A stretch of DNA of 64,000 nucleotides, taken from assembly GCA_001643675.2 (NCBI GenBank), contig LSRY02000014.1, positions 310,001-374,000 on the forward strand, written 5' to 3'. The stretch comes from Monocercomonoides exilis PA203 (lineage: Eukaryota; Protista; Preaxostyla). The notes beneath the pieces were generated by a model that was given only the letters and a program-made list of their open reading frames with translations, had not been told where the DNA came from and did no database searches. The translations under genes were made by a program, and so were the position numbers. This document shows, piece after piece, positions 370 to 23,975 of the stretch (its first letter is position 1; every line of letters starts with the position of its first letter).

Positions 370-1124
370 GAGGATGTGGATTGGAAATTTGCAAGCAGGA
401 GAGCAAAAGAGCAGGAGAGCAATGAAAATGAGACAATGAAGACAATGCAAGGTGTTTTTGCCATTCACAACAACATCCTCCAAAAATAGAGCATCGAGAG
501 GAATTTGGCAAGAGGAATGCAAAAGGAGGATGATTGAAAGGGAAATGGCTGTTGGGGCAGAAGCCTTTGAGAGGAATGGACATGGTGAAAGGAGGAGAGA
601 TGAAGTGATGCACCCTCTCAAAAAAAGAGTCGGAATGAAAAGATGAGCTGGATTTGTTTGAAGGAAGTGAGCCAACTTTGTGGAATGGAGTTGAGGAGAG
701 TTTTGTTTTTCTGTCAGATTTTCAACACAAATTATTTTATTGTTTTTTCATTTTTCGTTTTTGTTTGCTTTTCAAAGTTTGTTGTGGAGCAGCATGATTT
801 GCGAGTTGTGCTGCCTGTTTGAGTTCTGATGCGATGTTGATTTGAGACAATTAATCTTTGAATATTTCCTTCCACTTTTCTTCTTTTTCTTTGTTGTTGT
901 TATTGCTGTTGTTGTGTTTGAATGGAGTTTGTCACGAAGTGATTTGTGAACAAAAACTGCTGGGCATTGTTCGTTATGGGATGCTTTTTCCTCAATCAGT
1001 TTCTCCTTGTCAGTTTTTGAATGCACATTGATTTTTCGATGGATTTCACAATCCACTTGGCTGATGAGACTCAAAAAATATCCTATCCCATGTCATTTAA
1101 TCCATCATAGAAAACAAAAGAAAA
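1..1124 (+). repeat. Repeat copy 1: receptor-pseudokinase 3' CDS plus ~755 bp of 3' flank
   Basis: Reverse complement aligns by eye to 23976-24995 plus 19451-19585 (copy 2, split by DIRS element B). Similarity ends abruptly after AAAACAAAAGAAAA. Confidence 0.9.
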
Positions 1125-7019: not shown

Positions 7020-8888
7020 TGAAAATTTGTTTGAAAAGTCTTTGATAAAATATTTGATCATGGAAATTTGAATCAAAATATGTTTGCCAATGGTTAATTT
7101 GCTGCCCATAATTTTTTGAAAAACAAAATTATTTATGGACAGGGTGATTCTATTTAATTTCATAATTTTTCTGTCAGAAATTTCGAATCAACAACTTGTC
7201 TCAAATTCCGAGAAATTTCTTGAATCTTTTTATGAAAGTCAGAAATTTTTTTCTCTGTATTTCGATGACAACATGCTTTTGACAGACAATAATTTAAAAG
7301 CATTTGTCTCTTCTTTTCAAAATTCTTTTGCAAATAACTGTGAATTAGTAAATAACACAAACCCCGAATACTTATATGATTTCAAAAATAATCACCCAAC
7401 CATTTTTTTGTAAGTCGAAAATGTTGAAATAACAGTTTTTTCTGAATTTCTCATTTATTGATCAGTTTTAATAGACAACTCTTCAAATTATTCCATGGAA
7501 TAAATAAAAACATGTCATCGTTGTTCCCTTGAATTAGTGTGTGCAGAAGAGAAATGGAGAGTGTGCATTGAAAAAATAGATAATAAAATGAGATGTTCAG
7601 TTAAAACAGAAAATATACACATTACGTTTTTCAAAAAGAAAAATGCATTAATGAAAATTTTTTTCGATAGTCATTTATGTATTATTTTCATTTTTTCCTG
7701 AAAATTGAACAAAATGAACTTATCAAAAAAATAAAAGCATGACAAATTATAAAAAAAAATCAAACAAACCAACCATATTTATAAATCAAAATGAAATTTG
7801 TTTTGTTGTTGTCATTAAAATTTAAATATTTTTTGAAATTTCTTTTTTGTATCTGTTTCAAATTCGGAATTTTTGCATTGATTCAATATCGCAATTTTGA
7901 AAATAAGTTAATTGTCAAAATCTGTGTCTCTTGTGACATATCACATTTAAAGAATTTGAACAAATGACCTTGAAACTGATAATTTCGATCAGGAAAAAAG
8001 TTGATAATTGAACCGTTCTTAATAAAAATTATTTTTTGTTACAAAAATCATTTTGTTTTGATAAAACAATAATAAAATCAAAAGTCTTTGGAAATAAATT
8101 TAAATCTTCCAAATTTATTGACATTTCAGCAATGACGCTTTCAAAAAATGGTTTCGTTTTGATTCGAACACAATAACTTTTCCTTATCATTTAAAAATTT
8201 TGGAAATTTTTCTTTGGAGTACTCGTTTTTATTTATAATTTTTAAAAAAATTTTTTATATTGTTCTCATTATCGTTCCACAATTATTCTTTTGAATTCAA
8301 ATAAATGAATAAAAATTAAATGACATACTAATTTTCGCGGAGAAAAATCTATCTACAACACCTCTTTATTAAGGGAGTGAGCTCTGCATTATGGGCTCAG
8401 CCGGTCACAAAAGTGATGTGTTCAAATGGATGAAGTGTTAAAATAACATTACAATAAATATATTCTGTGCCTAATGGCATACTGAGGCGTTGCAGGGATT
8501 GGCAATTGTCTTTGGCTCGGCTTGGGACGTAGTTTTGGCATTTTGTAAACGGCGCTCGATTTAGGCATCGGCAACAGCACACGGCTATCCGCATAGGCTC
8601 TTTGTATTGGCTAGCTGTTCACGTTCTTGGTATTCCTTTGGTGTGGCTTTATCTTTGGCTTGTTCTGTTGATTTCATCAATGATATCTGTGTTATTTTGA
8701 CTCAATTAATTTCATTGTATTTCTTTCTCCTTGAATATCTCTTCCATTATTCCAGGTTGTGAATTATTATTTAAAGGTCTTGGCTTGGGAAAATTACTGG
8801 AATGATTGGACCACGTCCGTTCGGTGGAACATAATTTATTTAAAACACGAAGTGTGAAGCGGAGGGAGGAGCTATGCTCTGGGAGGGA

Positions 8889-8990
8889 AAAGAGGTGTTG
8901 TAGATAGATTTTTCTCCGCGAATTAAAGTACAAAGTACCTTAATTCTAGAGAAAAACCGTTATCTACAACACCTCTTTATTAAGGGAGTG
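8889..8990. repeat. Internal complementary region (ICR) of element A
   Basis: 8889-8922 is the reverse complement of 8334-8367 and 8923-8990 is the reverse complement of 13087-13154, joined as ...CCGCGAA|TTAAAGTAC... Confidence 0.95.
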
Positions 8991-11900
8991 TTCATAGTTG
9001 GGCAAATCTTTGCATTTACATATTTCAGTGCGTATATCAGTCCTATCTGTCTCTGGTTCTCCTCTGGTAATTTCTGGTTCATTCCTCTTTGCAGTATTAT
9101 TGTCCTCTGGCTCTTCAACACTCGTTGGAAATATTATCGCTTGATTAGGCTGTGTCGCTGGAAAAGTTTGCTGCGATGGAAGATCTGGGGAAGGCGCTTG
9201 TGTAGAAAAAGGTTCGGCTGTTGAATCCGCGTGATTAAGTGGTTGAAGCGGAGGAAGACCAAACATTATGGTTGTTGTTTGCTGAGTGGCACAGAAGGGA
9301 ATGCCCTCTATCTGTTTTGAAATGCAGCTCTTCTCAACAACTGTGCTTTCATCTTGTTGGGAGCTATCTTCCTCTGAGGCAAGGAGTGCGCGGGCCATCC
9401 GGTTTGCCAGGTTCGCTTTGTAGTATGATCTGGACGGAGTGTGAGCAGTTGTTGATAGGCGTGCGTGTTTGGCGATGCACACCTCCGGGACACCACTTGA
9501 TGCTAGCTTGGATATCGATGCGTGCTTAATCGTATATGGTCTGTATTCGTCAGGAACTCCTGCTTTCCGCAAACCTATTCTAGCAAGCGTTCTTATCCCC
9601 TTTGCAGTTAACGGTGTATGGTGCGTTGTATTAAGAAGGAACGTATCTCTATTTTCATACGTTGCTTTGACTCTCTCCCAAAGGGTGTGAATAGCTCTTG
9701 CAGGACATATTCGTTTGTGAACCTCCTCCAGGCATGGAACAGTAATGTATTCCCTGGATCTGGAAGTCTTAAGTCTTGTGGATAGATAAATCGCATCACT
9801 TTCGAATATTGAGTTAGCCATTGATATCTGCTCAAGCTCATGGAATCGACATGAAGTGAACAGCATAACAAGCAAACTGCACTTCACAGTCAGGTCAAAA
9901 AAAGAAAGATACTCGTTCAGCCCGTAGTTCTCGTAATATGACAGCACGATGTCGGGGCTCCACATCTTTGTGTACGGCTTTCGATGGGTTTGGGAAAATG
10001 AAAACGATCTGAATATTGTGCTTATTAAACTAACTTTACTCAAGTCCTTACCATATACCGTCTTGGAAAAGAGTGAAATCGCTGACCGTGTAGCACACAG
10101 GCATGAATATTTACCACCTTTGTCTCTCATGGATAGTAGACAATTTGCACAATCCATTGACCATTCATCGAAATATTTCGGGAACGGCCCCAGTTTCAAC
10201 TCTTCCCATTCCCTGCTGAAGTGTGCAAAGCCAAATGTGTATTGATTCCATGTGGACTTTGCTATGCTCTCCTTCGTAACGGAAATGATCCTATCCGGGA
10301 CTCCGCAGATCCTGAGGCTTTTCCACCACCATTCTTCTCCAACTTCTCTTACCAATTGATTGTTACTGCCATGTATCCCCCGGGAGGCAGTGCTGCACCC
10401 GTTCTCCTCAGGCCTGCTCCCGGGATTAAAACCGCTTTCGAGTTCCTCCAAACGTAATGTTGAGACATCATCTCTTCCAGTAAGTTGCTCCATATCTGAT
10501 TCCTCCATGCCGGAAGAAGGATGATTGCTCTCGCTCTCTCTGCTTTTGCTTTCTTGAGACTCGGAAGAATCAACGGAATGGGAGGGTGAATGAGCATTGT
10601 GTTCCTTGTCCAATCTGCCGTGAGACCATCTTGAGCGAACGGACTTCCTGGACCATACCATATCTCCTTCCTCTTGTTTCCTTCGTTTGCGAAACCGTCT
10701 ATCTCTGCTATCACTCCGAGAGCCCTCTCCGCTTCCTTCAGACATTGACTCCTTATCATATAATCTCCTGCGGCCTCCAACCTGGACAATGCGTCTGCGG
10801 TTGTGTTTTTCTCCCCCTGGAATGTGGATTGCTGTCATCGTCAATTTCATCGACTGACATGTGGCCTTGATCTTTCTCAATAACGGCAGGAGGTTGGGTC
10901 CCGCACCCCACCTGTTGATGTTGAACACTACACTGGTGTTGTCGGAACGGAGAAGGATCTTGCACACATGGTTGTGAGTGATTTGTGATGAAAAATTGTT
11001 GAGAGCCAATAAAACTGCAAGGAGCTCCTTGAAATTGGATGTTTGGAGCCTTGTGATGTTGCTGAACTGTTTGTGAAAGTGAAATCTCTCTCCTCCAACT
11101 GCCAAGGTCGCTCCGCAAGCCCAAGGGGAAGCATCTGTCGTTAATATGGCGTCGGGCTTCGAGAAGTCCACCAGTTCTCTGATGTAATTCTCCTTGAGCC
11201 TTTGAATCCAGATGTCCAATTGTCTTTTTATGCTGCTGTTCAAGAGAACCGCTCCTTCCCAGCCATCTTTCTTGACCTGCTTGTTCAGTAAATGGTACAT
11301 TTTGTTCATGTATAAAGAGGCGTCTTTGTACACGAACCGTGCGGCGCTGAGCTGACCTATGAATGAAGCGAAGTCTCTCGTTTTTGCAAAGCTGCTCTTC
11401 CTCACCCTCTTCATCCATTTGATACACTCTTTCCTCAGTTCCCTGCGTCTCTGTTGTTCCATTGAGACAACCATCCGGCTCGTATTCCACGTCCATCCGA
11501 GATAGTTGAAGTTCTTCTTGGGGAAGAACTCGCTCTTCTCCCTGTTGATGATTAAGCCCAACTGTTGAAACCACTCGACAATTTCTTGTGTTGCCAACTT
11601 CAGCTTGACTTGATCTGGATCCAGCAATAGGACATCGTCCAAGTAGGAAATGCACCTCACCTTCCATCTTCTTCGGATTTCTTGCGAAACTTTTCTCATG
11701 ACTTTCGTGAAAATTCTCGGTGCGTCTTTGAATCCGAAGGGCATGCCTTTGAACCCGTAGAATCTCTCTTCGAACTTGAAGGCTAGGAATGGGGTGAATT
11801 CCTTGTGAACTGGGATCAGGAAATAAGCCTGAGATAGATCTAGTGAGGTTGCGAAATCTCCCTTTTGGATCAGTCTCTCCACAGTGCGATGGTCTTCCAT

Positions 11901-12327
11901 TTTGAAATGAATATCTTTCAGTGCGGAATTGAGTGCACGGCAATCGAGGATTTGACGGAACTTCCCTGTCTTTTTCTTTATGAAAAATATGTTGTTCAAG
12001 CAACAGACCTCTCCTTCTTGTAACTGTGTTAATATATCTGTCCTGAGTCCTTCTTGAATCCATTCTGAACAAGCCTCTTTTTCCTCTGTGCCACCCAGGA
12101 AGCCTTTGCCTTTCATCTTTTCCTGTTTCAACCTGTCCCTTGCAGCTCTCCCCTTCCAAATCGGTCTTATCCCGTCTTTTATCCAATTGGTCACTCCGAT
12201 CTTCTTCCATTCCTCGGCAAAGGCTTGGGTGCGGCCCCCTACTTTCTCCGAAAAAAATTGCTTCTTGATGCTGCACGTGTTGATCTTCCAGTTCCCGAGC
12301 TTGTAGATCTAGATTTCCATGAACCAA
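8964..12327 (-). CDS. Element A tyrosine recombinase ORF; long N-terminal part overlaps RT in another frame; broken by the same frameshift
   Basis: The 10756-12327 ORF joins the 8964 frame after the 1-bp correction. YR motifs SCRFHEL, RLKT, CPARA, YTIKHAS, SYY. Confidence 0.8.
10349..12257 (-). CDS. Element A RT - RNase H - Dam-like methyltransferase ORF, interrupted by +1 in the C5 run at 10813-10817
   Basis: VGGR N-terminal motif, LDLSQAY, MPFG, YLDD (RT); TDAS, ELLA, SDN (RNase H). Removing one base gives HIPGEKNTTADALSRLE, joining the 10349-10789 ORF (IDGFA...DGL...HPPIPLI; MT). Confidence 0.85.
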
Positions 12328-13075
12328 TTCTCCTTGTTCTTTGTGACAAGTGTGAAGCAGAGCTTCCCTGTCTCCGCTCTGTTCTGGCCTGCAACATTGG
12401 CTTAATCCTCTCCAGCTGCTCTGTGGTCAATAACGGATCATCCTTTTCTTCTTGAAGTGTTTTGGCGGCCTTGAAACCGAATCTGGCTTGAATGCGCATG
12501 TGGCGAGCCGCTTGGAGAGCTGCGACTGTAAGCATCATTGCATCTTCCTGGTGTTGTTGTGCTTCTTCTGTTGTCCCTCGTGTTGCCATCAACATCGCTT
12601 TCAAAGCGGGCATTAATAAAGATTCCACATTATACGCTCCTTCGTCTAAAGCATCGGAGAACCAACTTTGCGATCGCGAATGTGGATGAGTCGTAGCAGG
12701 CAGGAACTGGGGGACCGATAAGGATTCGTAATCTCGTAATGTCTGGAGTAGATCTCCTTGATCAACACGATAAGCAAATATTGTACTCTGCAAGTTTTCT
12801 CCAAAGTATAATTTAGCTGCCTCTAATAGAGGTTGTGTTGGGGAATGAGGCAAGCCAACTGAACTAGTTGATGTTGAGGTTGTCGAGGTTGTTGAGGACA
12901 TAGCTGACATGGCTGGGAATTGGGATCCTGGGGCCTCTGTTGTTGGAATGGAGATGGGAGGCGCCATTCCCATACCGCCTGTAGGTCCGCTTTGCGGGAA
13001 TATCCCGCTCAGTCCCGACGCAGGTCCTTCCAACAAAGTTGTCATCTTTCGAATTTTGTGATCGGCTGAGCCCAT
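12239..13075 (-). CDS. Element A ORF1, gag-like (278 aa)
   Basis: First ORF of the element, with its ATG inside the 5' ITR. Shares ARxxRIQARFGFxxA and a C-terminal FFR motif with element B ORF1; basic Arg/Ser-rich tail. Confidence 0.8.
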   Translation of the reverse strand: MGSADHKIRKMTTLLEGPASGLSGIFPQSGPTGGMGMAPPISIPTTEAPGSQFPAMSAMSSTTSTTSTSTSSVGLPHSPTQPLLEAAKLYFGENLQSTIFAYRVDQGDLLQTLRDYESLSVPQFLPATTHPHSRSQSWFSDALDEGAYNVESLLMPALKAMLMATRGTTEEAQQHQEDAMMLTVAALQAARHMRIQARFGFKAAKTLQEEKDDPLLTTEQLERIKPMLQARTERRQGSSASHLSQRTRRIGSWKSRSTSSGTGRSTRAASRSNFFRRK

Positions 13076-13474
13076 AATGCAGAGCTCACTCCCTTAATAA
13101 AGAGGTGTTGTAGATAACGGTTTTTCTCTAGAATTAAGGTACTTTGTACTTTAAATTAGAATCATTTCTGTAAGAAAGAGCTTTATCCATTTTTCTCATC
13201 TTATTTAAAAAATTTCAAAAAATTTTTAATATTGAAATATCACTCAATAGTGTTTTTATGAGGAATAATATTTCTATTTATTAAAAAAATCTGAAACAAA
13301 CAACTACAAATTCCTTTTTGTTTTTGCTGTTCAATAATTTTTGATTTTATTTCAAAATTTGATGAGTTTGAAAAAAAAAAAAAAATGATAAACATCCGTG
13401 GACCAAAAACAAATACCAGTTATTTAATTGGTCTTTAAAATTTTTTGGAAATGAATTATATAATATTTTTTTTC

Positions 13475-16400
13475 ATGTTTTCTTTCGCTGATTCAGAAGC
13501 AGAAGATGATCAACTTCACATTCCTTCTGTATGCACATTAACTAATGCATTATTTACGCTTCTTCTATAATTTGCATGGACTAATTTTAAAATGCTGAAC
13601 AAATGTGTTCAGGCTTTTTTCAGAGCTGATTTTGACCTGACGAAAGAAAGAGATTTTGCCTCTGTTTTATCATTGTCACCATCATATTCTTTAGAGGGGA
13701 GCTCAATTGTTTCAGAAAAGGTGTGCAGTGTCTGTGTATTATTTATTTTAGGTTTTAATTTCGTTTCCATATAACTTTGTCTGTTCGTTTAATTACGTGT
13801 AATAAGCTTTTGAATTATATTGATCAGATTGAAGTGAGTATTGTGAAAACTCTTTCGAAGCGGAAAGAGTTTTATTTGTCAACAATGGACAATTTTTCTG
13901 TGTTAGAAGCAGAAATTGCCTCGACAATAAGTTCTCTCTCAACATTTAGGTTGCCTATGATTAATAAACGATTAAAACACGCATTTTCCGTTTCATTTTG
14001 TTTATTAATTTTATGAAAAGACAAACTTTGAAAAAAGCAGATGCTGAACTTTTTCAGGGCGGGATTGACATTGCAAAGTTGCACAAGAGAAAGGCACACA
14101 TGCAACAACTAACTGAAGTGGTTTGACATGCTATTTGATATTTCTCTCCAACTTTTACAAATTTTCTTTTCTTTTCTTTTTCTTTGTTCGTCTCTTTTTT
14201 TCGATTGAAATAGATGTCTCATATGCTGATAGTTAAGAATTCGGTTTATCAAATCGAGAAAAAAAGGCAAGAGGGAGATTACATATCGTTTGCTGATTGG
14301 CATTTTTATTTGTGTTTTTTTTTTCAAGCAGTGTACGTGATTACTAACAACATTCTGTTTAGAGTTATTCATCTTGCAGAATCAACGCGAGATATGATTC
14401 AAGCTGAACTGTTTTCGTGCAATCAGCTTCGTTCAATAACAACAAAAATCGACAAAATTTTGGATGAAATCAGTTCAAATCTTAAGCAGAAAGTTATCTC
14501 AGCATCATTACCTCTGTTTATTCCCTCCGATTTCCGGATTTCTTTTGTGAATCTTCCAACTTTCTTCTTTTCTTCTGAAATGTTTTTTGCTTCTGTCGCC
14601 GAACTGAGGGCAAGAGGTGTCGGAAGTGCGAGCACAGGCGCTGCTTCTGCAACTGTCACGTCAAACGCGTCTTCTTCTTCTTCTCTTCTTTCGCCTCTTT
14701 CAATTTCTTCGCTTCATCTGCCGTCGTCTTTGCCTTCTTCTTCCTCATTCTCTTCCTCCTCTTCTTCTTCGTTCCAACGGGCAGATGCTCTTTCGTCATC
14801 TGCTTCAGCTCAGCTGGCATTGTCTTCACAGCAGATTGTCACAGATGACACTTTGTCTTCCATCATTTCTCTTCTTGTTCAGTTTGCTCCTTCCTCTTCC
14901 TCTTCCTCTTCTTCTTCTTCTTCTTCATCCTCTTCTTCTCCTCTGCCAGTCTTCGTTTCTCAGCTGTTTTCGATGGATGCTCTTCGTCTTTTCCTCACTT
15001 CATTCATTCGCCTTCTTCCAAACACAGATTTTTCTGCAGCGTTCCACAAGTCTGCCTCGCAAGTCGTCAAACAGGACATGACGATGCTGCTGATTGAGGA
15101 GTACAGCTCCTTTCTTCAGGCACACCCGCACTTCAAAGAAGAAATGGAGATGAAGAAGAAGATCGAGGCAGACCAGGCGCGGATGCTGGCTGCGTTGGGG
15201 ACTGCTTCTCCGTCTGGAACACCTTCTGCCTCACAAACATCGCTTTCTGCAAACTCCATTCTGAATGCTTCTTCGCCAACATCCTCTTCTTCTGCTACCA
15301 CTTCGCCTTCTTCTTCTGCTCTTTCTCCTTCTCCTTCTTTTTCGTCTGATGCTTCGTCTTCTGCCGATCGCTACGGCTCGATTTCTTCCACTTCATTGCC
15401 ACGTCACTCAGCACAAGCATCTCTTTCCTCCTCTTCTTCTTCTTCCACTTCCTCTTCAGCAGCTGCAAGCAGCTTGGCTTCTTCGCAGCATTCATCTCAG
15501 AGAGGAAGAGCCAACTCTTCTGCTTTGTCATCATCATCATCTTCTTCTTCTTCTTCTCTTCCCTCTTCTTCTCCTTTTGCAGCTGTTTCTGCTTCGACTG
15601 TCTCGACAGACAGAGTCATCAACAGAGAGCGTTCTTCGTCTCCATCTCTTCGCAACCACTCAAACACAGCCACACCTTCTTCACCTGCTTCTCTTTCATC
15701 ATCATCATCATCATCATCATCTTCCTCTTCTTCCTCTTCCTCTTTGCCTTATTCAACCTCTTCTTCGTCTTCTTCTTCGTCTCCTCCTTCAAACAACGAT
15801 GTGAAGAAGATGATTTCTGCGATGAATTCATCAGAATTCCAGCAGTTTCTGTCGAAAGTGAGTCGCATTTTTATCAATCGGATGACTTTGCTTGTCTTCT
15901 TCGGGAAGCTTGTGAAGGCAGCAGCAGAAGAAGAAGTGATCCGGCGGCTGCTGATTGCGTATGAGAAGAGAAGGAAAGAGATCAGAGAAGAAGAAGAAGA
16001 GAAGATGGAGAGAGAGCGGAAGGAGAGAGAAGAGAAAGAGGAGCTGCGGCTGGCCAATGAGGAGATGCTGAAGATGGAAGGGATGGAGAAGGGGAGAATG
16101 GAGGAAAGAGAAAGAGAAAGAGAAAGAAGCAGAAGAGGAGAGGGAAAGGAAAAGAAGAGCTTCTTTGATGATGCCAATGAGGAAGATGAATATATCAGCA
16201 GAAGAGAAAGAAAAGATTTGGAGAAAACAGCAAAAAGAGAGAAAGAAGATGGGAAGAAGAAAGCGTCAACATCTGGATCGAAAGAAAACACTGAAAAACG
16301 CTCTTTTTTGGAGTCCTTTAAAGAGAGGATGAAGGGATTCTCTAACTCCTCCTCATCAGCCTCAGCTTCGTTCTCGTCTTCTTCATTTGGTGCTTCAAAC

Positions 16401-19174
16401 TCACTTGAACTTTCTTCTTCTTCTTCTTCTTCTCTTTCCTCTTCCTCCTCTTCCTCTTCCATCAACACTTCAGACTCACCTAACAAAGAAAAGCAGAAAT
16501 TGCAGTCAAACGCCCATTCCCGTCCAAAAGCGACCGCATCGTCTTCTCCTTCTTCAAACAGGCGTCTTTCCGCGTCTGCGCCGTCTTCGCTGGAGCAGCT
16601 GCATTCATCTCTTGTCAGTCTCCACTCGTTCCTGATTGCGCTGTCGTCTTCGATCTTGTCGCTGTTTGCTCTCATCAAAGACCGCATCAACACAGTCATT
16701 TCAGCGCGGGAGCCGTATTTCAAAGAGAAGAGGCACGTGAACGAAAGCGGGTTGGCGTCGCTGATTCAGATAGCGCGGTCTGTGCGGATCTTTGAGCGGG
16801 CAGAGAAGAGCGGAAGGGAAGAGATGGAGGAGGTGGAGAAGGGGGTGATGGGGATATACCAGATGACAAGGATGTTTGTGGAGAAGTGGGGCAAAAAGGA
16901 AAACGAGGAAAAGAAAGTCGACTTTGAGAAGACTGATGCTGATGCTGATGCTGATGAGAAGAAGGAAGAGAAGGAAGAGAAGGAAGAGAAGGAAGAAATG
17001 AGCAGAAAATTGGCTGATGACTCGTCTGCTTCCTCTTCTTTGACAGACACTTCTTTGTCTTCAGCTCAGTCATCGTCTTGTCCTTCGTCTTATCTTGTGT
17101 CACTTGTTACTCTTCTTCACTCTTCATTCACTTCAATCTTTCCTCAGCTGTCCTCAATTCGCCAGTCCACTTTTTCCTCATCATCGTCCTATTCATCATC
17201 ATCTCTCCTTTCTTCTTCGCCTTCTCCTTCTTCGCTGCCTTCGCCAACTGCTTCTTCGTCTTCTTCTTCGAATTCTTCCCTTTTTGCCCATCTTCACTCT
17301 GTTGTCACCAACTTCCTGACTGTTATGCATCAGATGCAGCTGAAGGCGCTGACGGAGGCCTTTCGCGAGGACAGATGGGTTCAAGCAGAGGAAATCGAAG
17401 AGGAGACGCAAGAGATGATAAGAGAGATTGTGAAGAATGGAAGAAGCAGCAGCGAAAAGAAGAAGAAGAAGAAGAATAAGAGCAAAAAGAGCAAAGAGAA
17501 GGAGAAGAAAAAGAAGAAGGCAGAAAAAGAAGGAGAAGAAGGAGAGCAACACACAGAAGAAAAAGTACATGATGAGAACGACGATGAGGACGAAGAACAA
17601 GATGAAGACGACGAAGACATTGGTGACGAGTTTTTGGAGTGGCTGAATTCAGGGGAGGCAAAACAGACAGCTGCACCAGCATCTTCATTGGCAAGAGCAT
17701 CAGAATCGCCATCTTTGCCTATGAATTCTTCTCCTTCTTCGTCTTCTCTCACAAAAAAGAGTGTTCGCAGCAAGCTGCTTTTGATTTCTGGAGTGCCATT
17801 TTGTGTCTTCCAGTGGATGCAACAGTTCATCTCATTCGTTTTCATCAATTTGGGAGGACTGGGCTTGTCTTCCTCGTCAGACTCAGCAGCTCTTCCCTCT
17901 GCTGTTTCATCTGCATCGTCTTCTTCTTTTCTGCTGCTTCTTCTTTCGCACATCACAGATTTATTTCTGCTCTCAAACAATCTTCTGCGGCAGGCGATTC
18001 TTCAGGCGCAGATCACTTCACTCGACAAAAGCATCAAACTTGTGTCGACCAGCCACATTGCCATTGCCCACCAGTGTGTCAGTGCAATGAAGATGCTTTT
18101 GCCTTATGTGAGAGTGATTGTGAGGGCAGAATGGCTGAGAGAGAAAAAGAAGGAAAGAGCTCGAAAGACGCAAAAGAGTTCATTGGTGAATAAAAAAGAT
18201 GAGAAAGAGAAAGAGAAAGAGAAAGAAAAGGAGAAAGAAAAGTTGCTGTTCAAGTCATTTGATTCACTGGAGGAGCAGTTGACGAGCCATGCAAATGAAT
18301 TGGAGGAAAAAATCATATTCATCGCTGGAGAGGCTGTGAGACAGCAAATCGTTCAACTAAATGTTTGCAAAGACGATAATGTGATGAATTGAACGATTGA
18401 ATATTTTTATATTTTATTTTTGCTTTTGTTTATTATTCAACTTTTGCTGTGCTTTTGATTCTAATTGTCTCTATTGATTTCTATTGTTATTTCTCGATAT
18501 GTTAAATCGACTAAACAGCTATCGTCTTTATTTCCTGCCTCTTCGAATCGTTTGCTTCCGATTTCAATTGCTCCATCCTCTTCTTCTTCCGCTGCATCAT
18601 CTGCGAATGGAACAACATATCCTGTTGCTCCACCAGAATCAATGGTGATTGCCGTTCAGCGACTGACTGATTTATCCCGCTCGTTGAATGTGATATTGCC
18701 AAAAGATCTGAAAAAGGTATTGACGAAACAGCAAACAACATTCTTTGATTTCAGAATTTTTAATTGTTTCTTTCTTTTCTTTTCTTTTCTTTTTTTTAAA
18801 AATTTTCAAATCATTAATTTTTCAAAACCTCTTCTTTATACTGTTTCTTTCCAATGCTATTATTTATCAGAGCATAATGCATAAATCCACCATTCGAGCA
18901 CTTGAAATTATAACCGAAACAATGCAAAGACAGATTAGTTCAATAAATACTCAACAAAAAAAATCTGCACAAAAATTGTATGAACTGTACTTCATTGCTT
19001 TCGATTTAATTTTTAAAAATTTCCCTTTTTTAAAAAATTCATGCTATTAATGATAGTTTGTCTGATTGCATAGACTATCTGCACATTGCTCTGCAACAAC
19101 ACATGAAGGACGATGATAAAAGGGATGTGAAGAAGGAATTAACAAAAGCATTTTTGTCACAACCAATAGTATAA
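13475..19174 (+). CDS. VPS54: GARP complex subunit Vps54-like protein, multi-exon, expanded by Ser-rich and Glu/Lys-rich insertions; ends approximate
   Basis: N-terminal LLNYIDQIEVSIVKTLSKRKEFYLSTMDNF...GGIDIAKLHKRK and C-terminal NNLLRQAIL...SIKLVSTSHIAIAHQCVSAMKMLLPYVR...FDSLEEQLTSHANELEEKII resemble Vps54 conserved blocks as I recall them. Most of the coding sequence lies in ORF 14214-18392. Confidence 0.65.
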
Positions 19175-19450
19175 TGTTGAAGCATGTTCAGAAAATTCGG
19201 ATATTGCCACTCAAAATAATAAGGAACTCATGAAGAAAAAAATTTCTGGTATCTATTCGTTTTTCTTGGACCACTTTTGATAAATTGAATCCTTGATTCT
19301 CAGCATTTCCCCGAACTTACAACAACATGTTTCAGAACTTTTTATCAACAACTTTTCCATGATTATTAATGCCAAATTTATTTGTTTTGAACTGCTTTCC
19401 ATAAAGAAATGTGCTGTTTTTCAGTAAATCAGAAACTGATGAGCTCCGAT

Positions 19451-19585
19451 TTTTCTTTTGTTTTCGATGATGGATTAAATGACATGGGATAAGATATTTT
19501 TTTTGAGTCTCATCAGCCAAGTGGATTGTGAAATCCATCGAAAAATCAATGTGCATTCAAAAACTGACAAGGAGAAACTTATTGA
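19451..19585 (-). repeat. Distal part of repeat copy 2 (3' flank of the receptor gene), cut off by the element B insertion
   Basis: Reverse complement matches ~992-1124. Confidence 0.9.
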
Positions 19586-19695
19586 TCAAAGCGCAAGCAC
19601 TTTGATTTAAAAGAAAACATTCTCTCACTTCCTTCTCTTCTATTTACGAGAGAGAGATCATCACTTAAGGGTCAGTCACGATCACTGATCTAAAA

Positions 19696-20535
19696 ATGAT
19701 GATCCCTAACAATCCTCTGGGAACAGGACTTGCGGCCGAACCGAGCGCAGCTGCGCTGCCTGGTGGTCCAACAAGCGGGTTTCCGACATTTCCCGGACCC
19801 TTTTCCGCTTCCCAACCTTCTTCTATTTCATCCTCACTCTCCCCACCTTCTACCACCCTTGGCGAAGAAAAAGAAGAAGAAATTACACTGGAAAATTCGT
19901 TTCTTAAAATATTTGGTAGAGCACCGGAATTATCGTTATATGATCTTCCATTACCGGAACAGGAGATAAATGACTTGGTTGCTTCGTTGAAGACAGAAGA
20001 CTTATCCCCTTTCCTCCCTAATGCGCCTCCACCTTTTGTAAGGACTACCAGTCCGTACAAAGACGCCTTAGATCAAGCAGGAGAAAGATGTGAGACGTTT
20101 CTTTACCCCGCAATGAAACTTATTTTATTTGCCCATACGAAAACAAAAGATGATGAAGCTCAGAGTGCCGTAGCGCAAGCATGTTTACTGCTTGCACAAG
20201 CCTTGAAAGAAGCCAGAAACGCTCGCATCCAAGCGAGATTTGGATTTACCGAAGCAGCGAGAATGAAAGAGGATTCAGCATCACCGCTCCTAACGAAAAG
20301 GCAAAGTGATTTATTGGAAGAGGTCAGGAAAACCTCACAATCAACAGCGAAAAGATGGACTTCGTTCTCATTTAATTCCAAATCCTTTGGCAAAAGCAGA
20401 TATGGAAAACATGAAAGCTACCAACGCCCTCGGTTTTTTCGTTCGGGTCCCCGGTCGTGGGCAGGGAGAAAAACCTCAAATACATACCGCAGAAGTCCTT
20501 CTCAAACGCGATCCAGGGGAACGGGAACCAACTAA
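19696..20535 (+). CDS. Element B ORF1, gag-like (279 aa)
   Basis: Position in the element, plus ARNARIQARFGFTEAA and FFR motifs shared with element A ORF1. Confidence 0.8.
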   Translation: MMIPNNPLGTGLAAEPSAAALPGGPTSGFPTFPGPFSASQPSSISSSLSPPSTTLGEEKEEEITLENSFLKIFGRAPELSLYDLPLPEQEINDLVASLKTEDLSPFLPNAPPPFVRTTSPYKDALDQAGERCETFLYPAMKLILFAHTKTKDDEAQSAVAQACLLLAQALKEARNARIQARFGFTEAARMKEDSASPLLTKRQSDLLEEVRKTSQSTAKRWTSFSFNSKSFGKSRYGKHESYQRPRFFRSGPRSWAGRKTSNTYRRSPSQTRSRGTGTN

Positions 20536-23500
20536 GCCAGTCACCTTCAATTGTTGGAGGAAGAACGGAATATTTTCGAGAAGCGTGGAGAATGATAGAT
20601 GGAGAGAAGTTGGTAAAAAGAGGCGTCATTCCAATTTGGAAAAACAGGATAGCCAGGGAGAAATTACTAAACTCAAAAATGGAAACATACAGCCCCCATC
20701 AATCAGGGGAAGCAACCAAAGCGATGGCAAAGCTGATCCAGAATCAGCTCGAAACGAACATAATACAAAAAATACAGAAAAGAAAGGTGAAACATTTAAA
20801 TCCAGTGTTTGTGATAAAGAAAAAACAAGGGGGATGGAGACAAATTATCGATTGCAGAGCGTTGAACAATGCAACGAAGTCAATCCATTTCAAACTGGAG
20901 GATTACAGGTCACTAGAACGAATTATAACAAGAGGAGATTATGCAACAACTTTAGACCTAAGCCAGGCCTACTATTTAGTGAAAGTGGACGACAACTTCA
21001 AGCCGTTTCTTGCGTTCGAATTCAACGAAAATTACTACTGTTTCAACGGAATGCCATTTGGATACAAAGATTCTCCAAGAATCTTTACAAAAATCATGAG
21101 GAAGGTGATACAATTCATCCGGGAGCAATGGAACGTAAGAGCAATCGCGTACCTCGACGATATTATTCTTCTTCACCAAGACCAAAAGAAATTAAAATGG
21201 ATAACTCAGAAAGTCGTTTCTCTTTTCGAAAGCCTTGGTCTTCTGGTAAACACAGAAAAGAGTCATTTGATTCCCTCACAAACTTTCACCTATTTGGGTT
21301 TCGAGTGGAACACGCACCAGTTCAATGTAGCTCTGGAAATGATGAGAACGAAAGAACTTATAAAGGAATGTACCAGATGGAGGAGGAGGTCCCTCAGAGC
21401 GAAAGAAGTGAGAGTAAGAGACCTTGCAGCGTTCATTGGAAAGCTGAACGCTACAAGGTTCGTGGTTCGAGAAGCTTCTCTGTTTCTCTCAGATCTTTAT
21501 CGCACTTTAAACAAAATGGTTTCGATGGTGGGATGGAGAGGGAAGATGAGGATCAACCAGTCCATTCTCCCCAATCTAACCAAATGGATATCGAGGTTGA
21601 AAACCAACACGCCAAGACAACTATGCCCACTCTTTCTTCCAGATGCAACACTTACGACGGATGCTTCCAGAAAAGCTGTTGGAGCTTATTTAAGAATCGG
21701 AAACAGTATTTTGGATTTTCATCGCAGACTCCCCTATTGGCAACGAAATCAAAGTTCAAACTATCGGGAGATGTTCGCAATTTTGTCAGCTCTAACTCAC
21801 TTCTCCCCAATTCTGTTATCCAATCGCATCCACAAACTACTTATCAGATCGGACAACTCAACATCGGTGTTCAACCTGAACAGGTGGCGGGCAGGAGCGA
21901 ATTTGAGAAGACTCCTATTGAAGATTTGGAAACAAACGCACACGATGCAGATTCAAGTGAAAGCGCAACACATCCCCGGTCAAAGAAACGAAAGGGCCGA
22001 TTCTCTTTCCAGGCTAGAAAGGGGAGGCGACTATCAGATAAAGCAAGAATCCTACAAGGAGCTTGTAACGAAGATGAGATTGAACATAACGTTGGACGCT
22101 TTCGCCACAAAACAAAACAAGAAAGTGAGCAGATGGTGCGGGCCAGGAAGCCCGATAAACGAAGACGGTCTGCAGCAGCCTTGGCGAGGAGAGACAGTTC
22201 TTGCTCATCCTCCAATTCCTCTCATTCTTCCGACAATCAGGAAAATGATTCTCGAACGAGCTCGAGGTCTTCTCCTTCTTCCCGATTGGAAGGGACAAAT
22301 ATGGGAGCCGTTGTTGAAAAGAACGACCCATATAGAATGGATGTGGAAGAGCCAGAGCGAACTTCTTACCCCGGGACCATGGATGAAGAGGATGGATGCT
22401 TGCCTGCCACCAGGGAAGCTTCGAGTTGTACTGATGAATCCTTAGCGATCAATGGAGAACACTGGTTCAAAGGAGTTTTGCAAACAAGAGGATTTCCAAT
22501 GGATATATGTGATCTGTGCAAATCCAGTCTTTCGCCTTCGACGTGGCATGGGTACTTACTCAGTTATGCTCATTTCGGAGACCAGTGGACAAACTGCGGC
22601 TATGGTCTTTCTGTTGGAGATTGGTTCAATTGGGTCGTTAGATGTGCCGATGTTTTCCTTAAGCTTTTCAACAAGGGGCTGAAGGAGCAATCCCTTTGTA
22701 AAATACGAGCTGCCATCTCTCTCATTTCTCAATTATTATTCGAGAGAAGTTTGGGAGATTACCCGCTTATGAAGCTTCTCTTCCGATCATTTAAAAGATT
22801 GGAAAGGAGGAAGAAGAAAAATAAGCCTGATATATGGAACCCCAAAATACTTCTTGATTATATATCGGGGCTAGGCGAGAACGCGAACTTATCCTTCACT
22901 ACTCTCACGAAGAAAACAATTTGTCTTTGCATGCTATTCTCCGCCTGCCGGTTCACCGAGCTCGAGCGGATCAGTCTGAAAACATTCTGCAGTGAGAGAA
23001 GATTCAATTGCATTGGATACTTCGCTGAAAACAGGACCCGAAAGAACAGACATTATAATACCGTTTCTCACAGATACTCCTTCAATATGTCCTGCCTCAG
23101 CAGTGTGTGAATTGTGGTCCAGAATAAGCAAACTTCAAGACAACCCTGACCACTTGTTTATTAACGATCGCACAAAGATTCCACTTTCCGCAAGAGTGCT
23201 GAGAAAACTTGTTGCAAATCTCCTTCACGAGACAGGTATACCGAATTATTTTGGTCCTTACTCGATAAAGCATGCTTCAATATCTGCATTGACAATGGCT
23301 GGACTACCAATAGCGCAAGTGGCAAAGTTCGCAAGGCTGTCTCCACGAAGCGATACCATTATTAATTACTATTTTCAAAAGATATCGCCACATCCTGTGC
23401 GAAAGTGATTGCAGATCAAGCGGCTATTAATGCAACTTCCTCCCAGACCCAGTCATCACCTTTAAGTCTGCAAACCCTTCGCAAACCAAAAATTACCTTT

Positions 23501-23875
23501 GATGACAATTCAAGTTCAGAAGATATTGAGGACTCTTCGTCAACTGACGAAGAGCAAGATGAGGAGGACTACAGTCTGAACTCAAAGTCTGACAACATCG
23601 AGAGCGAAAAAGGAATCAGGATCAGGTTGGAAAAACCTAATCTGCAATATGACAACAAAAGCCAAACGATCTACAACGACGAAGAAGAACCATCAAAGCC
23701 AGACTACGTGGAGGAGCCAGACGAGAACAGTCATAAAGAGTATGAAAGAAGGAATTTTCGTGAGAAAAGACTAGTTGGAGAAGTTGTCCAGAAGAAAACA
23801 ATTGAGATAACAATTAAAACCAGAGCGCAAGCCAAACGTGAGCAACTCGAACAATTGCTGAGGGATGACAAATAA
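20306..23875 (+). CDS. Element B tyrosine recombinase ORF overlapping RT; two compensating frameshifts in A4 runs (22979-22982, 23377-23380)
   Basis: ORFs 20306-23110, 22992-23408 and 23405-23875 join as ...ACRFTELERISLKHSAVREDSIAL...CPASA...YSIKHAS...NYYFQKDIATSCAKVIAD..., colinear with element A YR. Confidence 0.8.
20415..22445 (+). CDS. Element B RT - RNase H - Dam-like methyltransferase, intact frame (no ATG before the VGGR motif)
   Basis: VGGR, LDLSQAY, MPFG, YLDD, TDAS, EMFA, SDN, HIPGQRNERADSLSR, LDAFA...DGL..PW...HPPIPLI. Confidence 0.92.
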   Translation, partial: KLPTPSVFSFGSPVVGREKNLKYIPQKSFSNAIQGNGNQLSQSPSIVGGRTEYFREAWRMIDGEKLVKRGVIPIWKNRIAREKLLNSKMETYSPHQSGEATKAMAKLIQNQLETNIIQKIQKRKVKHLNPVFVIKKKQGGWRQIIDCRALNNATKSIHFKLEDYRSLERIITRGDYATTLDLSQAYYLVKVDDNFKPFLAFEFNENYYCFNGMPFGYKDSPRIFTKIMRKVIQFIREQWNVRAIAYLDDIILLHQDQKKLKWITQKVVSLFESLGLLVNTEKSHLIPSQTFTYLGFEWNTHQFNVALEMMRTKELIKECTRWRRRSLRAKEVRVRDLAAFIGKLNATRFVVREASLFLSDLYRTLNKMVSMVGWRGKMRINQSILPNLTKWISRLKTNTPRQLCPLFLPDATLTTDASRKAVGAYLRIGNSILDFHRRLPYWQRNQSSNYREMFAILSALTHFSPILLSNRIHKLLIRSDNSTSVFNLNRWRAGANLRRLLLKIWKQTHTMQIQVKAQHIPGQRNERADSLSRLERGGDYQIKQESYKELVTKMRLNITLDAFATKQNKKVSRWCGPGSPINEDGLQQPWRGETVLAHPPIPLILPTIRKMILERARGLLLLPDWKGQIWEPLLKRTTHIEWMWKSQSELLTPGPWMKRMDACLPPGKLRVVLMNP

Positions 23876-23975
23876 GAGGTCAATCAAATAATAACAACAG
23901 CAGAGTATTCTCCCAATTATGGAACTCTCTCGTAAATAGAAGAGAAGGAAGTGAGATTCACATTTTCTTTTTCAA

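What the first reader, a model, noticed from the sequence alone, without database searches (positions are those of the whole stretch)
8334..23975. Two divergent DIRS retroelements share a distinctive end architecture: 5'-TYAAAG terminal hairpin ... AA-3'
Seen: the ITR cores of A and B are dissimilar in sequence, yet both 5' ends start with a ~20-nt hairpin (A: TTAAAGTAC-AAA-GTACCTTAA, 13154-13134; B: TCAAAGCGC-AA-GCACTTTGA, 19586-19605), then a ~16-nt A-rich spacer, then the ITR core. Both 3' ends lack the hairpin and end in AA. Each stem has one A-C mismatch that becomes a G-T/G-U pair on the complementary strand. Inference: the hairpin is selected on the antisense strand (3' end of minus-strand cDNA, or the ICR copy in the transcript) and could self-prime second-strand synthesis or mark the ligation/recombination site. 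I do not recall this as part of the standard DIRS replication model.
Basis: partly seen in the sequence, partly recalled or inferred. Interest (0 to 1): 0.8.

Follow-up and report, generated by a model that had tools for sequence, protein, structure and literature searches.

The report
Conserved terminal hairpin of oxymonad DIRS retrotransposons
Two tyrosine-recombinase (DIRS-type) retrotransposons of the protist Monocercomonoides exilis really do begin with a small hairpin, which is kept base-paired by compensating mutations in every family of these elements tested in the genome; the layout of the ends is already known for DIRS elements, but the conserved, strand-biased hairpin gives a concrete handle on their poorly understood replication.

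Summary
Element A (8334-13154, minus) and element B (19586-23975, plus) are DIRS1-like retrotransposons of Monocercomonoides exilis. Each starts with a 20-21 nt stem-loop, followed by a 17-nt purine-rich stretch and then the ITR core. Each ends in AA with no hairpin.

The ends are exact. A's internal complementary region (ICR, 8889-8990) copies both termini at 100% identity. An empty paralogous site (865-1124) brackets B with no target duplication.

The layout itself is known: left extension, divergent ITR, conserved ITR and a short crossover motif (Piednoel 2011). What looks new is what the left extension is:
- It is a 9-bp stem present in all 10 further RT loci (other families) tested.
- Four stem pairs change on both sides, and one pair shows all four Watson-Crick types.
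- Loop length varies.
- Every multi-copy type keeps at least one internal mismatch. This is usually A.C on the sense strand, which is G.T/U on the strand of the ICR in the transcript and of the minus-strand cDNA 3' end.

The hairpin is the apex of the roughly 100-nt junction/ICR palindrome. That palindrome folds better on the ICR strand in all 9 M. exilis families and 5 outside families examined.

Parvovirus-like self-priming with hairpin transfer is not supported, because no flip/flop forms occur. The function is inferred: a cis structure for end regeneration or joining. The scan held no matching earlier finding.

The parts
8334..13154 (-). Element A, a full-length DIRS1-like retrotransposon (4821 nt) with left-extension-only termini
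   Evidence: The ITR and ICR define both ends. The pol ORF carries RVT_1, RNase H and Phage_integrase hits. Five 100%-identical 5' ends lie elsewhere in the genome.
13134..13154 (-). A 5'-terminal hairpin (left extension): 9-bp stem, AAA loop, A.C mismatch at stem position 5
   Evidence: Sequence read. The covariance model scores it at 55.3 bits. Covariation is shown.
13117..13133 (-). A divergent (imperfect) outer part of the left ITR, a purine-rich stretch containing the conserved AGAAAA motif
   Evidence: It pairs imperfectly with 8334-8349 in the junction fold. The motif columns are invariant in alignment A1.
13054..13116 (-). A left ITR core
   Evidence: Inverted repeat I2, 63 nt, 98% complementary to 8350-8412.
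8350..8412 (-). A right ITR core
   Evidence: Inverted repeat I2.
8334..8349 (-). A 3' terminal divergent ITR part, ending in AA with no hairpin
   Evidence: It is the reverse complement of ICR 8889-8904 (I3).
8889..8990 (-). A internal complementary region. 8889-8922 is the reverse complement of the last 34 nt and 8923-8990 is the reverse complement of the first 68 nt. It includes a copy of the hairpin at 8923-8943.
   Evidence: Inverted repeats I1 and I3 are both 100%. It folds as one long hairpin: -52.1 kcal/mol on the element's sense strand against -43.2 on the other strand.
8964..12194 (-). A pol ORF (1076 aa) with RT, RNase H and tyrosine recombinase; it ends inside the ICR
12239..13075 (-). 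A first ORF (278 aa), gag-like by position only
   Evidence: It has no Pfam hit.
19586..23975 (+). Element B, a DIRS1-like copy (4390 nt) that has lost its ICR
   Evidence: There is no ICR in this copy. It is collinear with a 4693-nt full copy, apart from a 303-nt deletion between the ICR's ITR-core copy and the right ITR core.
19586..19605 (+). B 5'-terminal hairpin: 9-bp stem, AA loop, C.A mismatch at stem position 7
   Evidence: The covariance model scores it at 54.2 bits.
19606..19622 (+). B divergent outer part of the left ITR (AAAAGAAAAC)
19623..19654 (+). B left ITR core
   Evidence: Inverted repeat I1, 32 nt, 100%.
23925..23956 (+). B right ITR core
   Evidence: Inverted repeat I1.
23957..23975 (+). 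B 3' terminal divergent ITR part, ending in AA
   Evidence: The same sequence sits next to the hairpin copy in the ICR of full B copies.
20457..22445 (+). B RT / RNase H ORF, with a weak Dam-like hit
   Evidence: RVT_1 at 2.7e-31, RNase H families, and Dam at E = 0.0076, which is below the curated cut-off.
22992..23408 (+). B tyrosine-recombinase fragment. In this copy the downstream ORF 23405-23875 is in another frame.
   Evidence: Phage_integrase at E = 2.9e-4.
865..1124 (-). Empty paralogous target site of B
   Evidence: B's joined flanks align across the insertion point at 93.7% identity.

Best explanation
A and B are DIRS1-like tyrosine-recombinase retrotransposons of Monocercomonoides exilis with 'left-extension-only' termini.

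Shown here:
- The 5' hairpin is the left extension, the one part of the termini that lies outside the inverted repeat.
- When the 3' end is joined to the 5' end (the circle junction, also stored in inverted form as the ICR), the two ITR ends pair. The hairpin then caps them as the apex of an imperfect palindrome of about 100 nt.
- The element's first base is the first paired base of the stem.
- The 3' AA is the short crossover motif. It is shared with the target, because an A or AA precedes almost every insertion and there is no target duplication.
- The stem is maintained by selection for base pairing in a single-stranded (or extruded) nucleic acid. Pairing is best on the strand that carries the ICR in the transcript or plus strand and that forms the 3' end of the minus-strand cDNA.

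Inferred:
- The hairpin acts in cis after first-strand synthesis, in the ICR-guided regeneration and joining of the ends.
- Its built-in asymmetry is one mismatch plus an A-rich loop. This makes the regenerated terminus or junction on the minus strand fold well. The ICR copy on that same strand has the A.C version, folds poorly, and so stays available as template or splint.
For: Identity of the elements:
- RVT_1, RNase H and Phage_integrase hits.
- ITR plus ICR and no target-site duplication.
- The closest named proteins are from M. exilis.

Generality in the genome:
- An RT search gave 459 candidates, with identity to A down to 44%.
- The covariance model gave 136 hits, although only 150 candidates were scored. 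Most fall in opposite-strand pairs about 4.2-4.3 kb apart that flank RT loci.
- All 10 further RT loci chosen without knowledge of their ends carry the module about 1.1-1.3 kb upstream on the sense strand.

Pairing:
- In 55 distinct termini, 84.9% of cells are paired, against 14-42% when the partners are slid.
- 60 cells show a change on both sides, against 18.9 +/- 5.4 in shuffles (0 of 500 shuffles reach it).
- Pair 7 shows UA, CG, AU and GC. Pair 2 shows UA, CG and AU. Pairs 6 and 8 show GC and AU.
- Loops vary in sequence and length: AAA, AGA, GCA, AA, AT, ATAT, ATAA, ATTA, GCAA.

State at insertion:
- The 5' end and the ICR copy of the same element are identical in most subfamilies.

Polarity:
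- The 10 multi-copy types carry A.C in 8, another mismatch in 2, and G.T in none. Decayed single copies show new G.T 10 against new A.C 5, giving p = 0.033.
- In the ITR arms, A.C outnumbers G.T 11 to 3. The ICR strand is the more stable in 9 of 9 M. exilis families and in 5 of 5 outside families.
- The sense strand is only 46% G+T, so base composition does not explain the bias.

Independent instance:
- A GC-rich metagenomic element (L152, RT 36% identical to A) has the junction ...GTAA|TTCCCA-ACAAG-TGGGAA, followed by its ITR.

Literature:
- The ICR is essential, but it acts downstream of first-strand synthesis, and the cDNA intermediates are single-stranded (PMC7192593).
Against: - No direct evidence for any intermediate. 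Only assembled contigs of public runs were available. They show no junction reads and cannot show transcript starts.
- The polarity statistic rests on about four independent mismatch events.
- Types A2 and F (A.A) and type E (T.C) do not give wobble pairs on either strand.
- The outside lE-type element L152 has a perfect stem and almost no strand difference (-65.4 against -66.3 kcal/mol).
- Covariation alone does not separate a hairpin from a palindromic protein-binding site.
- The same strand polarity fits an RNA-level role of the ICR equally well.
Confidence: 0.55

Rival explanations
1. The functional form is RNA. The ICR in the transcript folds into a hairpin of about 45 bp with G.U pairs, and the 'terminal hairpin' is its apex. 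This hairpin would serve as a recognition or packaging signal for RT or Gag, or as a self-primer, as in Tf1-type self-priming or the 3' hairpin that Poulter and Goodwin proposed for DIRS-1. The DNA terminus would then be only a copy of it.
For: - The ICR strand is the transcript strand and always folds better. The gain is much larger with RNA parameters (5-12 kcal/mol) than with DNA parameters (1-4 kcal/mol).
- G.U pairs are well tolerated in RNA.
- If transcription starts inside the left ITR, as it does in DIRS-1, the ICR copy is the only copy of the hairpin in the RNA (PMC7192593).
Against: - In DIRS-1, deleting the ICR did not prevent synthesis of single-stranded cDNA. The authors take this to mean the ICR has no role in initiating reverse transcription (PMC7192593).
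- A long perfect-like dsRNA would be a target for RNA interference.
- The transcript ends of the M. exilis elements are unknown.
Confidence: 0.25
2. The palindrome is a double-stranded DNA site. Two recombinase monomers bind the two 9-bp half-sites at the circle junction, and the 'compensatory' changes are half-sites co-evolving with the protein.
For: - Tyrosine recombinases typically bind inverted half-sites around a crossover region (established knowledge).
- The element end lies exactly at the edge of the palindrome.
- Stem pairs 1, 3, 4 and 9 are nearly invariant.
Against: - The crossover is at the edge of the palindrome, not at its centre.
- The distance between half-sites changes by 2-4 bp among families (loops of 2, 3 and 4 nt, and 6 nt if the innermost pairs are open).
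- One position takes all four Watson-Crick pairs, which is not expected for base-specific contacts.
- The conserved mismatches show a strand bias that is meaningless for duplex DNA.
- The target needs only an A or AA.
Confidence: 0.12
3. The 3' hairpin of the minus-strand cDNA folds back and primes plus-strand synthesis, with parvovirus-like hairpin resolution.
For: - On the minus strand the hairpin is 3'-terminal, blunt, and fully paired with one G.T.
- The plus-strand primer of DIRS elements is unknown (PMC7192593).
Against: - Hairpin transfer would produce flip and flop orientations. None of about 60 independent 5' ends has the inverted loop or the inverted mismatch.
- Mismatches that persist across families show that the arms are not templated from each other.
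- A fold-back product would lack the first 12 nt of the plus strand.
Confidence: 0.06
4. The palindrome has no function of its own. It is shared because all these families descend from one ancestor.
For: The first 35 nt of A-like and B-like termini are alignable, so they share ancestry.
Against: - At least 9 double substitutions keep pairing in a 9-bp stem, while the ITR cores diverged beyond alignment and RT identity fell to about 45-50%.
- Slid-partner controls fall to 14-42% paired.
- An unrelated stem sequence sits in the same position in L152.
Confidence: 0.02

Closest known systems
DIRS1-like elements with left-extension-only termini (AcasDIRS1 of Acanthamoeba, AmDIRS1 of Allomyces; Piednoel et al. 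2011, PMC3266345, Table 3)
   Same: - The order of parts is the same: left extension, divergent ITR, conserved ITR.
- There is no right extension.
- The ICR is made of two adjoining parts (68 + 34 nt in A; 52-36 and 110-39 in the published cases).
- Size is about 4-4.8 kb, and the ORFs overlap.
- There is no target duplication, and a short junction motif is shared with the target.
   Different: - The host is a metamonad (oxymonad). A full-text search found no paper holding both 'Monocercomonoides' and 'DIRS'.
- The junction motif is A/AA rather than the usual NTT trinucleotide.
- That paper does not describe the extension as a palindrome or stem. The words hairpin, stem and palindrome are absent from it.
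Dictyostelium DIRS-1 (Cappello 1985 model; Malicki et al. 2020, PMC7192593)
   Same: - ITRs plus an ICR that equals the circle junction.
- The ICR is essential after first-strand synthesis.
- The cDNA intermediates are single-stranded.
- Poulter and Goodwin noted a small hairpin close to a terminus (positions 4792-4805) as a possible primer.
   Different: - In DIRS-1 the extension and its hairpin are at the 3' end (right extension), so the hairpin would be present at the 3' end of the RNA.
- Here the hairpin is at the 5' end, so its well-paired form lies at the 3' end of the minus-strand DNA and in the ICR of the RNA.
- No covariation evidence was available for DIRS-1.
Right-extension DIRS1-like elements from metagenomic contigs (L124, L125/L126, L128, L129)
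   Same: - The junction/ICR is a long imperfect palindrome with a small apex stem-loop inside the extension.
- The ICR strand folds better than the opposite strand in every family.
   Different: - The apex lies in a 49-82 nt right extension.
- The crossover is therefore on the other side of the apex.
- The apex sequences are unrelated to those of M. exilis.
Folded single-strand recombination sites of tyrosine recombinases (integron attC bottom strand; CTX phage attP(+)); comparison from my own knowledge, not tested here
   Same: - An imperfect hairpin is recognised more by structure than by sequence.
- The loop is variable.
- Conserved unpaired bases give strand choice.
- The crossover is at the base of the stem.
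- The mobile DNA is single-stranded.
   Different: - There is no evidence that a DIRS recombinase acts on single-stranded DNA.
- DIRS recombinases are only distant relatives of IntI and XerCD.
- This is a working analogy, not a claim of membership.
HIV-1 TAR RNA and its minus-strand DNA copy cTAR (PMC3643577, PMC1919501)
   Same: - An RNA hairpin has a minus-strand DNA copy that is also a hairpin.
- That copy must open to anneal during strand transfer.
- Self-priming by the terminal DNA hairpin is a known side reaction.
- That the DNA copy is the weaker of the two is my own knowledge; neither paper was read here.
   Different: - The element class is different.
- The repeats are direct in HIV and inverted here.
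- This is an analogy only.

Membership tests
DIRS1-like retrotransposons (order DIRS) | Reverse transcriptase and RNase H of the Ty3/Gypsy-related type | tested here: met
   A: RVT_1 at 3.4e-32 and RT_RNaseH_2 at 4.7e-4. B: RVT_1 at 2.7e-31 plus RNase H families.
DIRS1-like retrotransposons (order DIRS) | Tyrosine recombinase in place of a DDE integrase | tested here: met
   Phage_integrase in A at E = 9.5e-6 (25.9 bits, just under the curated 27.1) and in B at E = 2.9e-4. No rve integrase hit appeared in the Pfam scans of these ORFs.
DIRS1-like retrotransposons (order DIRS) | Inverted terminal repeats | tested here: met
   A: 63 nt at 98%. B: 32 nt at 100%.
DIRS1-like retrotransposons (order DIRS) | Internal complementary region made of the reverse complements of both termini, adjoining each other | tested here: met
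   A: 8889-8990, both parts 100%. B family: positions 4337-4443 of the 4693-nt full copy. The window copy of B has lost it.
DIRS1-like retrotransposons (order DIRS) | Insertion without target-site duplication at a short motif shared with the junction | tested here: met
   Filled against empty site for B. The 5' flank ends in A or AA in nearly all insertions.
DIRS1-like retrotransposons (order DIRS) | Dam-like methyltransferase domain between RNase H and the recombinase | tested here: inconclusive
   B: Dam at E = 0.0076, 16.4 bits, below the cut-off of 28.1. A: no hit in residues 421-760.
Left-extension-only terminus class (Piednoel 2011) | A 5' extension complementary only to the left ICR, with no 3' extension beyond the ITR | tested here: met
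   A's first 21 nt match only the ICR (8923-8943), and the 3' end stops inside the imperfect ITR. The same holds in 9 families.
Left-extension-only terminus class (Piednoel 2011) | A divergent ITR part (9-36 bp, partly complementary) between the extension and the conserved ITR | tested here: met
   It is 16-17 nt in A and 17-19 nt in B, and imperfectly paired.
Parvovirus-type terminal hairpins (rolling-hairpin replication) | Flip and flop orientations of the terminal palindrome among copies | tested here: not met
   All of about 60 5' ends have the same loop and mismatch orientation.
Folded single-strand tyrosine-recombinase sites (attC-like) | Recombination of one folded strand, with strand choice set by unpaired bases | not testable with these tools
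   Only indirect parallels exist: a conserved mismatch in every multi-copy type, a variable loop, and the end at the stem base.

The most novel reading that the evidence does not exclude
The DIRS recombinase may act on folded single-stranded cDNA, as integron integrases do on attC and XerCD does on CTX phage DNA.
- On the minus-strand cDNA, the joined or splinted termini fold into the fully paired (G.T) hairpin-capped stem, and this is the recombination site.
- The ICR copy on the same strand is the A.C version and is not recognised.
- The obligatory mismatch and the asymmetric loop would then be the device that tells the true junction from its internal inverted copy.
- This would explain why no multi-copy family has a perfect stem.
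- It would also explain why single-stranded linear cDNA is a productive intermediate in Dictyostelium.
Probability: 0.15. Interest if true: 0.85.

Novelty: new variant of a known kind. Interest (0 to 1): 0.55.

Why it matters
How DIRS elements prime synthesis, rebuild their ends and integrate is still largely a 1985 paper model. One recent experimental study shows that the ICR is essential and that the intermediates are single-stranded.

The structure described here is short and sits exactly at the terminus. It is present in all ten further RT loci tested in one genome and is supported by covariation and a strand polarity.

This gives specific mutations to test: disrupt the stem, restore it, swap the mismatch to the other strand, or change the loop. 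It also names the molecule to look for, which is a minus-strand DNA ending or joined at the stem base.

The finding also records a large and diverse DIRS population in an oxymonad. I found no published description of DIRS elements in this host group.

Tried and rejected
- Public reads. Only assembled contigs were on offer. Four DNA runs came from one sample, and one metatranscriptome gave a single 166-nt contig at 12835-13000. There were no joints and no starts, so nothing can be said about transcript ends or circle junctions.
I used short stretches around the 5' ends and ICRs instead.
- ICR partners were not found in the first-guess windows for 8 of the 10 further RT loci, because the offsets were wrong. 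The covariance model later located their 5' modules, and for some their ICR copies.
- The M. exilis covariance model finds nothing in the outside DIRS loci. The sequence module is lineage-specific, and only the architecture recurs.
- The Streblomastix contig (L123) and two short contigs (L151, L153) hold no ITR/ICR pair and were uninformative.
- Poulter and Goodwin 2005, Goodwin and Poulter 2001 and Poulter and Butler 2015 are not held. What I say about them comes only from citations in PMC7192593 and PMC3266345.
- An early guess that the host was a fungus, prompted by a neighbouring note on a Zn2Cys6 domain, was dropped when the protein names gave Monocercomonoides exilis.
- I considered base composition as the cause of the strand bias and rejected it. 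The sense strand is 54% A+C.
- The first Pfam calls on B failed because of a bad frame reference. They were repeated.
Full report
**What is there.**
The window comes from Monocercomonoides exilis. The closest named proteins to A's pol are M. exilis entries at 84-98% identity, and the assembly is 82.3 Mb in 101 contigs.

Element A (8334-13154, minus strand) has a gag-like ORF. Its 1076-aa pol ORF carries RVT_1, RNase H and Phage_integrase hits.

Element B (19586-23975, plus strand) has RT and RNase H with a weak Dam-like hit, and a broken recombinase region. The RT domains of A and B are 52% identical.

**Check of the observation.**

A's ends are fixed by its ICR. Bases 8889-8922 are the reverse complement of the last 34 nt. 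Bases 8923-8990 are the reverse complement of the first 68 nt. Both are 100% identical and adjoin each other.

The window copy of B has no ICR, but full B copies do. The window copy differs from a 4693-nt full copy by a 303-nt deletion. That deletion lies between two direct copies of the ITR core, one inside the ICR and one in the right ITR.

B's ends are confirmed by an empty paralogous site at 865-1124. The filled site reads ...TTGA|element|GGAAAAAGC and the empty site reads ...TTGA|GGAAAAAGC, so there is no duplication.

The 5' flank ends in A in almost all insertions, and mostly in AA for B. The terminal AA is therefore the short crossover motif that is known for DIRS elements.

**What is already known.**
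Piednoel et al. 2011 (PMC3266345) describe DIRS1-like termini as an optional left extension, a divergent ITR of 9-36 bp, a conserved ITR and an optional right extension. Their description includes a junction of about 3 bp and no target duplication.

That paper reports left extensions only in fungi and Amoebozoa. Left-extension-only elements are AcasDIRS1 and AmDIRS1.

A fits this class, with a 21-nt extension, a 16-17 nt divergent ITR, a 63-nt conserved ITR and an ICR of 68+34 nt.

The paper does not contain the words hairpin, stem or palindrome. Malicki et al. 2020 (PMC7192593) show three things for DIRS-1:
- The ICR is essential, but it acts after first-strand synthesis.
- The cDNA intermediates are single-stranded and mostly linear.
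- Poulter and Goodwin saw a hairpin at positions 4792-4805 of DIRS-1 that might prime reverse transcription.

**How general the hairpin is.**
The genome holds a very large DIRS population. An RT search gave 459 candidates, of which 113 were scored, with identity to A from 100% down to 44%.

The first 35 nt of A-like and B-like termini can be aligned. A covariance model of the first 40 nt gave 136 genomic hits, although only 150 candidates were scored. Most hits lie in opposite-strand pairs 4.2-4.3 kb apart around RT loci, which is the expected pattern for a 5' end plus its ICR copy.

I also picked ten RT loci of other families without knowing their ends. All ten have the module on the sense strand at the expected distance upstream.

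In the window the model hits only A's 5' end, A's ICR and B's 5' end.

**Evidence for pairing.**
In most subfamilies the 5' end and the ICR copy of the same element are identical. This gives the state at the time of insertion.

Across 55 distinct termini:
- 84.9% of stem cells are standard pairs, against 14-42% when the partners are slid.
- 60 cells carry changes on both sides, against 18.9 +/- 5.4 in shuffles (0 of 500 shuffles reach it).
- Pair 7 occurs as U-A, C-G, A-U and G-C.
- Pair 2 occurs as U-A, C-G and A-U.
- Pairs 6 and 8 occur as G-C and A-U.

These changes recur on A-like and B-like backgrounds, so I count at least nine separate double substitutions.

Loops differ in sequence and in length, at 2, 3 or 4 nt. 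A variable gap between half-sites, together with a position that accepts all four pairs, fits a stem better than a duplex protein-binding site.

**Polarity.**
Every multi-copy hairpin type keeps at least one internal non-Watson-Crick pair, at stem position 5, 7 or 8.
- The mismatch is A.C on the sense strand in 8 of 10 types.
- It is A.A or T.C in the other 2 types.
- It is never G.T.

One subfamily (B4) repaired the C.A at pair 7 and carries an A.C at pair 8 instead. Another (B3) has two adjacent A.C-type mismatches, which become two G.T pairs on the other strand.

In decayed single copies the new mismatches are G.T 10 and A.C 5. Mutation pressure therefore does not favour A.C. The comparison of 4:0 conserved events against 5:10 decayed events gives p = 0.033.

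The bias extends into the ITR arms, where A.C outnumbers G.T 11 to 3. The ICR strand folds better in 9 of 9 M. exilis families. The sense strand is only 46% G+T, so composition is not the cause.

**The hairpin is the apex of the junction palindrome.**
The joined ends, and equally the ICR, fold into one long hairpin in which the ITR ends pair and the extension caps them. For A the energy is -52.1 kcal/mol on the ICR strand and -43.2 on the opposite strand.

Four unrelated metagenomic DIRS1-like families with right extensions show the same plan, with the apex stem inside the right extension. In every one the ICR strand is the more stable.

A GC-rich metagenomic element (L152, RT 36% identical to A) has the M. 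exilis layout with a different sequence. Its 3' end finishes in ...GTAA, followed by the hairpin TTCCCA-ACAAG-TGGGAA and then the ITR. Its stem is perfect and shows almost no strand difference. The mismatch rule is therefore not universal.

**Mechanism.**
Shown:
- The stem is conserved and covaries.
- It sits exactly at the terminus.
- It is present in both the terminus and the ICR.
- Its pairing is strand-biased.

Inferred: the ICR acts after first-strand synthesis in DIRS-1, and the intermediates are single-stranded DNA. I therefore favour a role in the ICR-guided rebuilding and joining of the minus-strand ends. In this reading the asymmetry keeps the ICR copy (the A.C version) open as template or splint, while the regenerated terminus (the G.T version) folds.

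An RNA-level role of the ICR hairpin remains a serious rival, because the stability gain is largest with RNA parameters.

Parvovirus-like fold-back priming with hairpin transfer is not supported. No flipped loops or flipped mismatches occur among about 60 ends, and the long-lived mismatches show that the arms are not copied from each other.

The most novel reading still open is that the recombinase recognises the folded single strand, as with integron attC sites. The mismatch would then act as the strand and site discriminator.

**Limits.**
- There are no read-level data.
- The polarity test rests on few independent events.
- The key older reviews could not be read.
- The covariance-model search of the genome scored only 150 candidates, so the counts are lower bounds.

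I built no consensus of any whole element and did not single out any copy as intact or active.

Noticed in passing
window 19586-23975, compared with L064:101-4793: The window copy of B lacks the whole ICR. A 303-nt deletion joins the ITR-core copy inside the ICR to the identical core of the right ITR; these are direct repeats. The cause could be either recombination after insertion or a template jump during reverse transcription. Going by the DIRS-1 result that the ICR is essential, this copy should be unable to complete a replication cycle.
   Followed up: partly
window 865-1124 and 19436-24125: The flanks of B have a paralogue about 18 kb away, in inverted orientation, at 93.7% identity and without the element. 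This points to a local segmental duplication that is older than the B insertion.
   Followed up: partly
L124:9541-9589, L125:9275-9345, L128:9287-9368, L129:9230-9309: In four metagenomic DIRS1-like families, the apex of the right-extension hairpin carries a sense-strand motif that looks like a consensus 5' splice donor: CAG|GTAAGT, CAG|GTAAGG, GAG|GTAAGT and CAG|GTTAGT. [quoted passage not shown] I have no explanation. It might bind U1 snRNP or simply be part of the stem.
   Followed up: no
whole genome G000: The DIRS population of M. exilis is very large and diverse. There are 459 RT candidates and many families at 44-57% RT identity. DIRS-like RT and recombinase genes also occur in Streblomastix strix (L123). 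A full-text search found no paper that mentions both Monocercomonoides and DIRS.
   Followed up: partly
L014 / L015 (G000:C6:869361-872737): Two identical A2-like 5' ends face away from each other 3 kb apart, and their upstream flanks are identical. This looks like an inverted duplication that includes the insertion site.
   Followed up: no
L111 / L112 (G000:C75:54900-61180): An inverted match of at least 329 nt links the region upstream of a B4-type element's RT and a region about 5 kb downstream. This is much longer than the usual ITR. It may come from nested or head-to-head copies.
   Followed up: no
window 13117-13133 and 19606-19622; alignment A1 columns 28-34: The most conserved unpaired part of the terminal module is a purine run, A-G-A-A-x-A-A, on the sense strand. 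Its partner in the ICR puts a purine tract right next to the hairpin copy in the transcript. This resembles the polypurine tract that primes the plus strand of LTR elements.
   Followed up: no
window 14214-18392: A single uninterrupted 1392-aa ORF with a Vps54-like domain lies between the two elements. It appears to be a host gene without introns.
   Followed up: no
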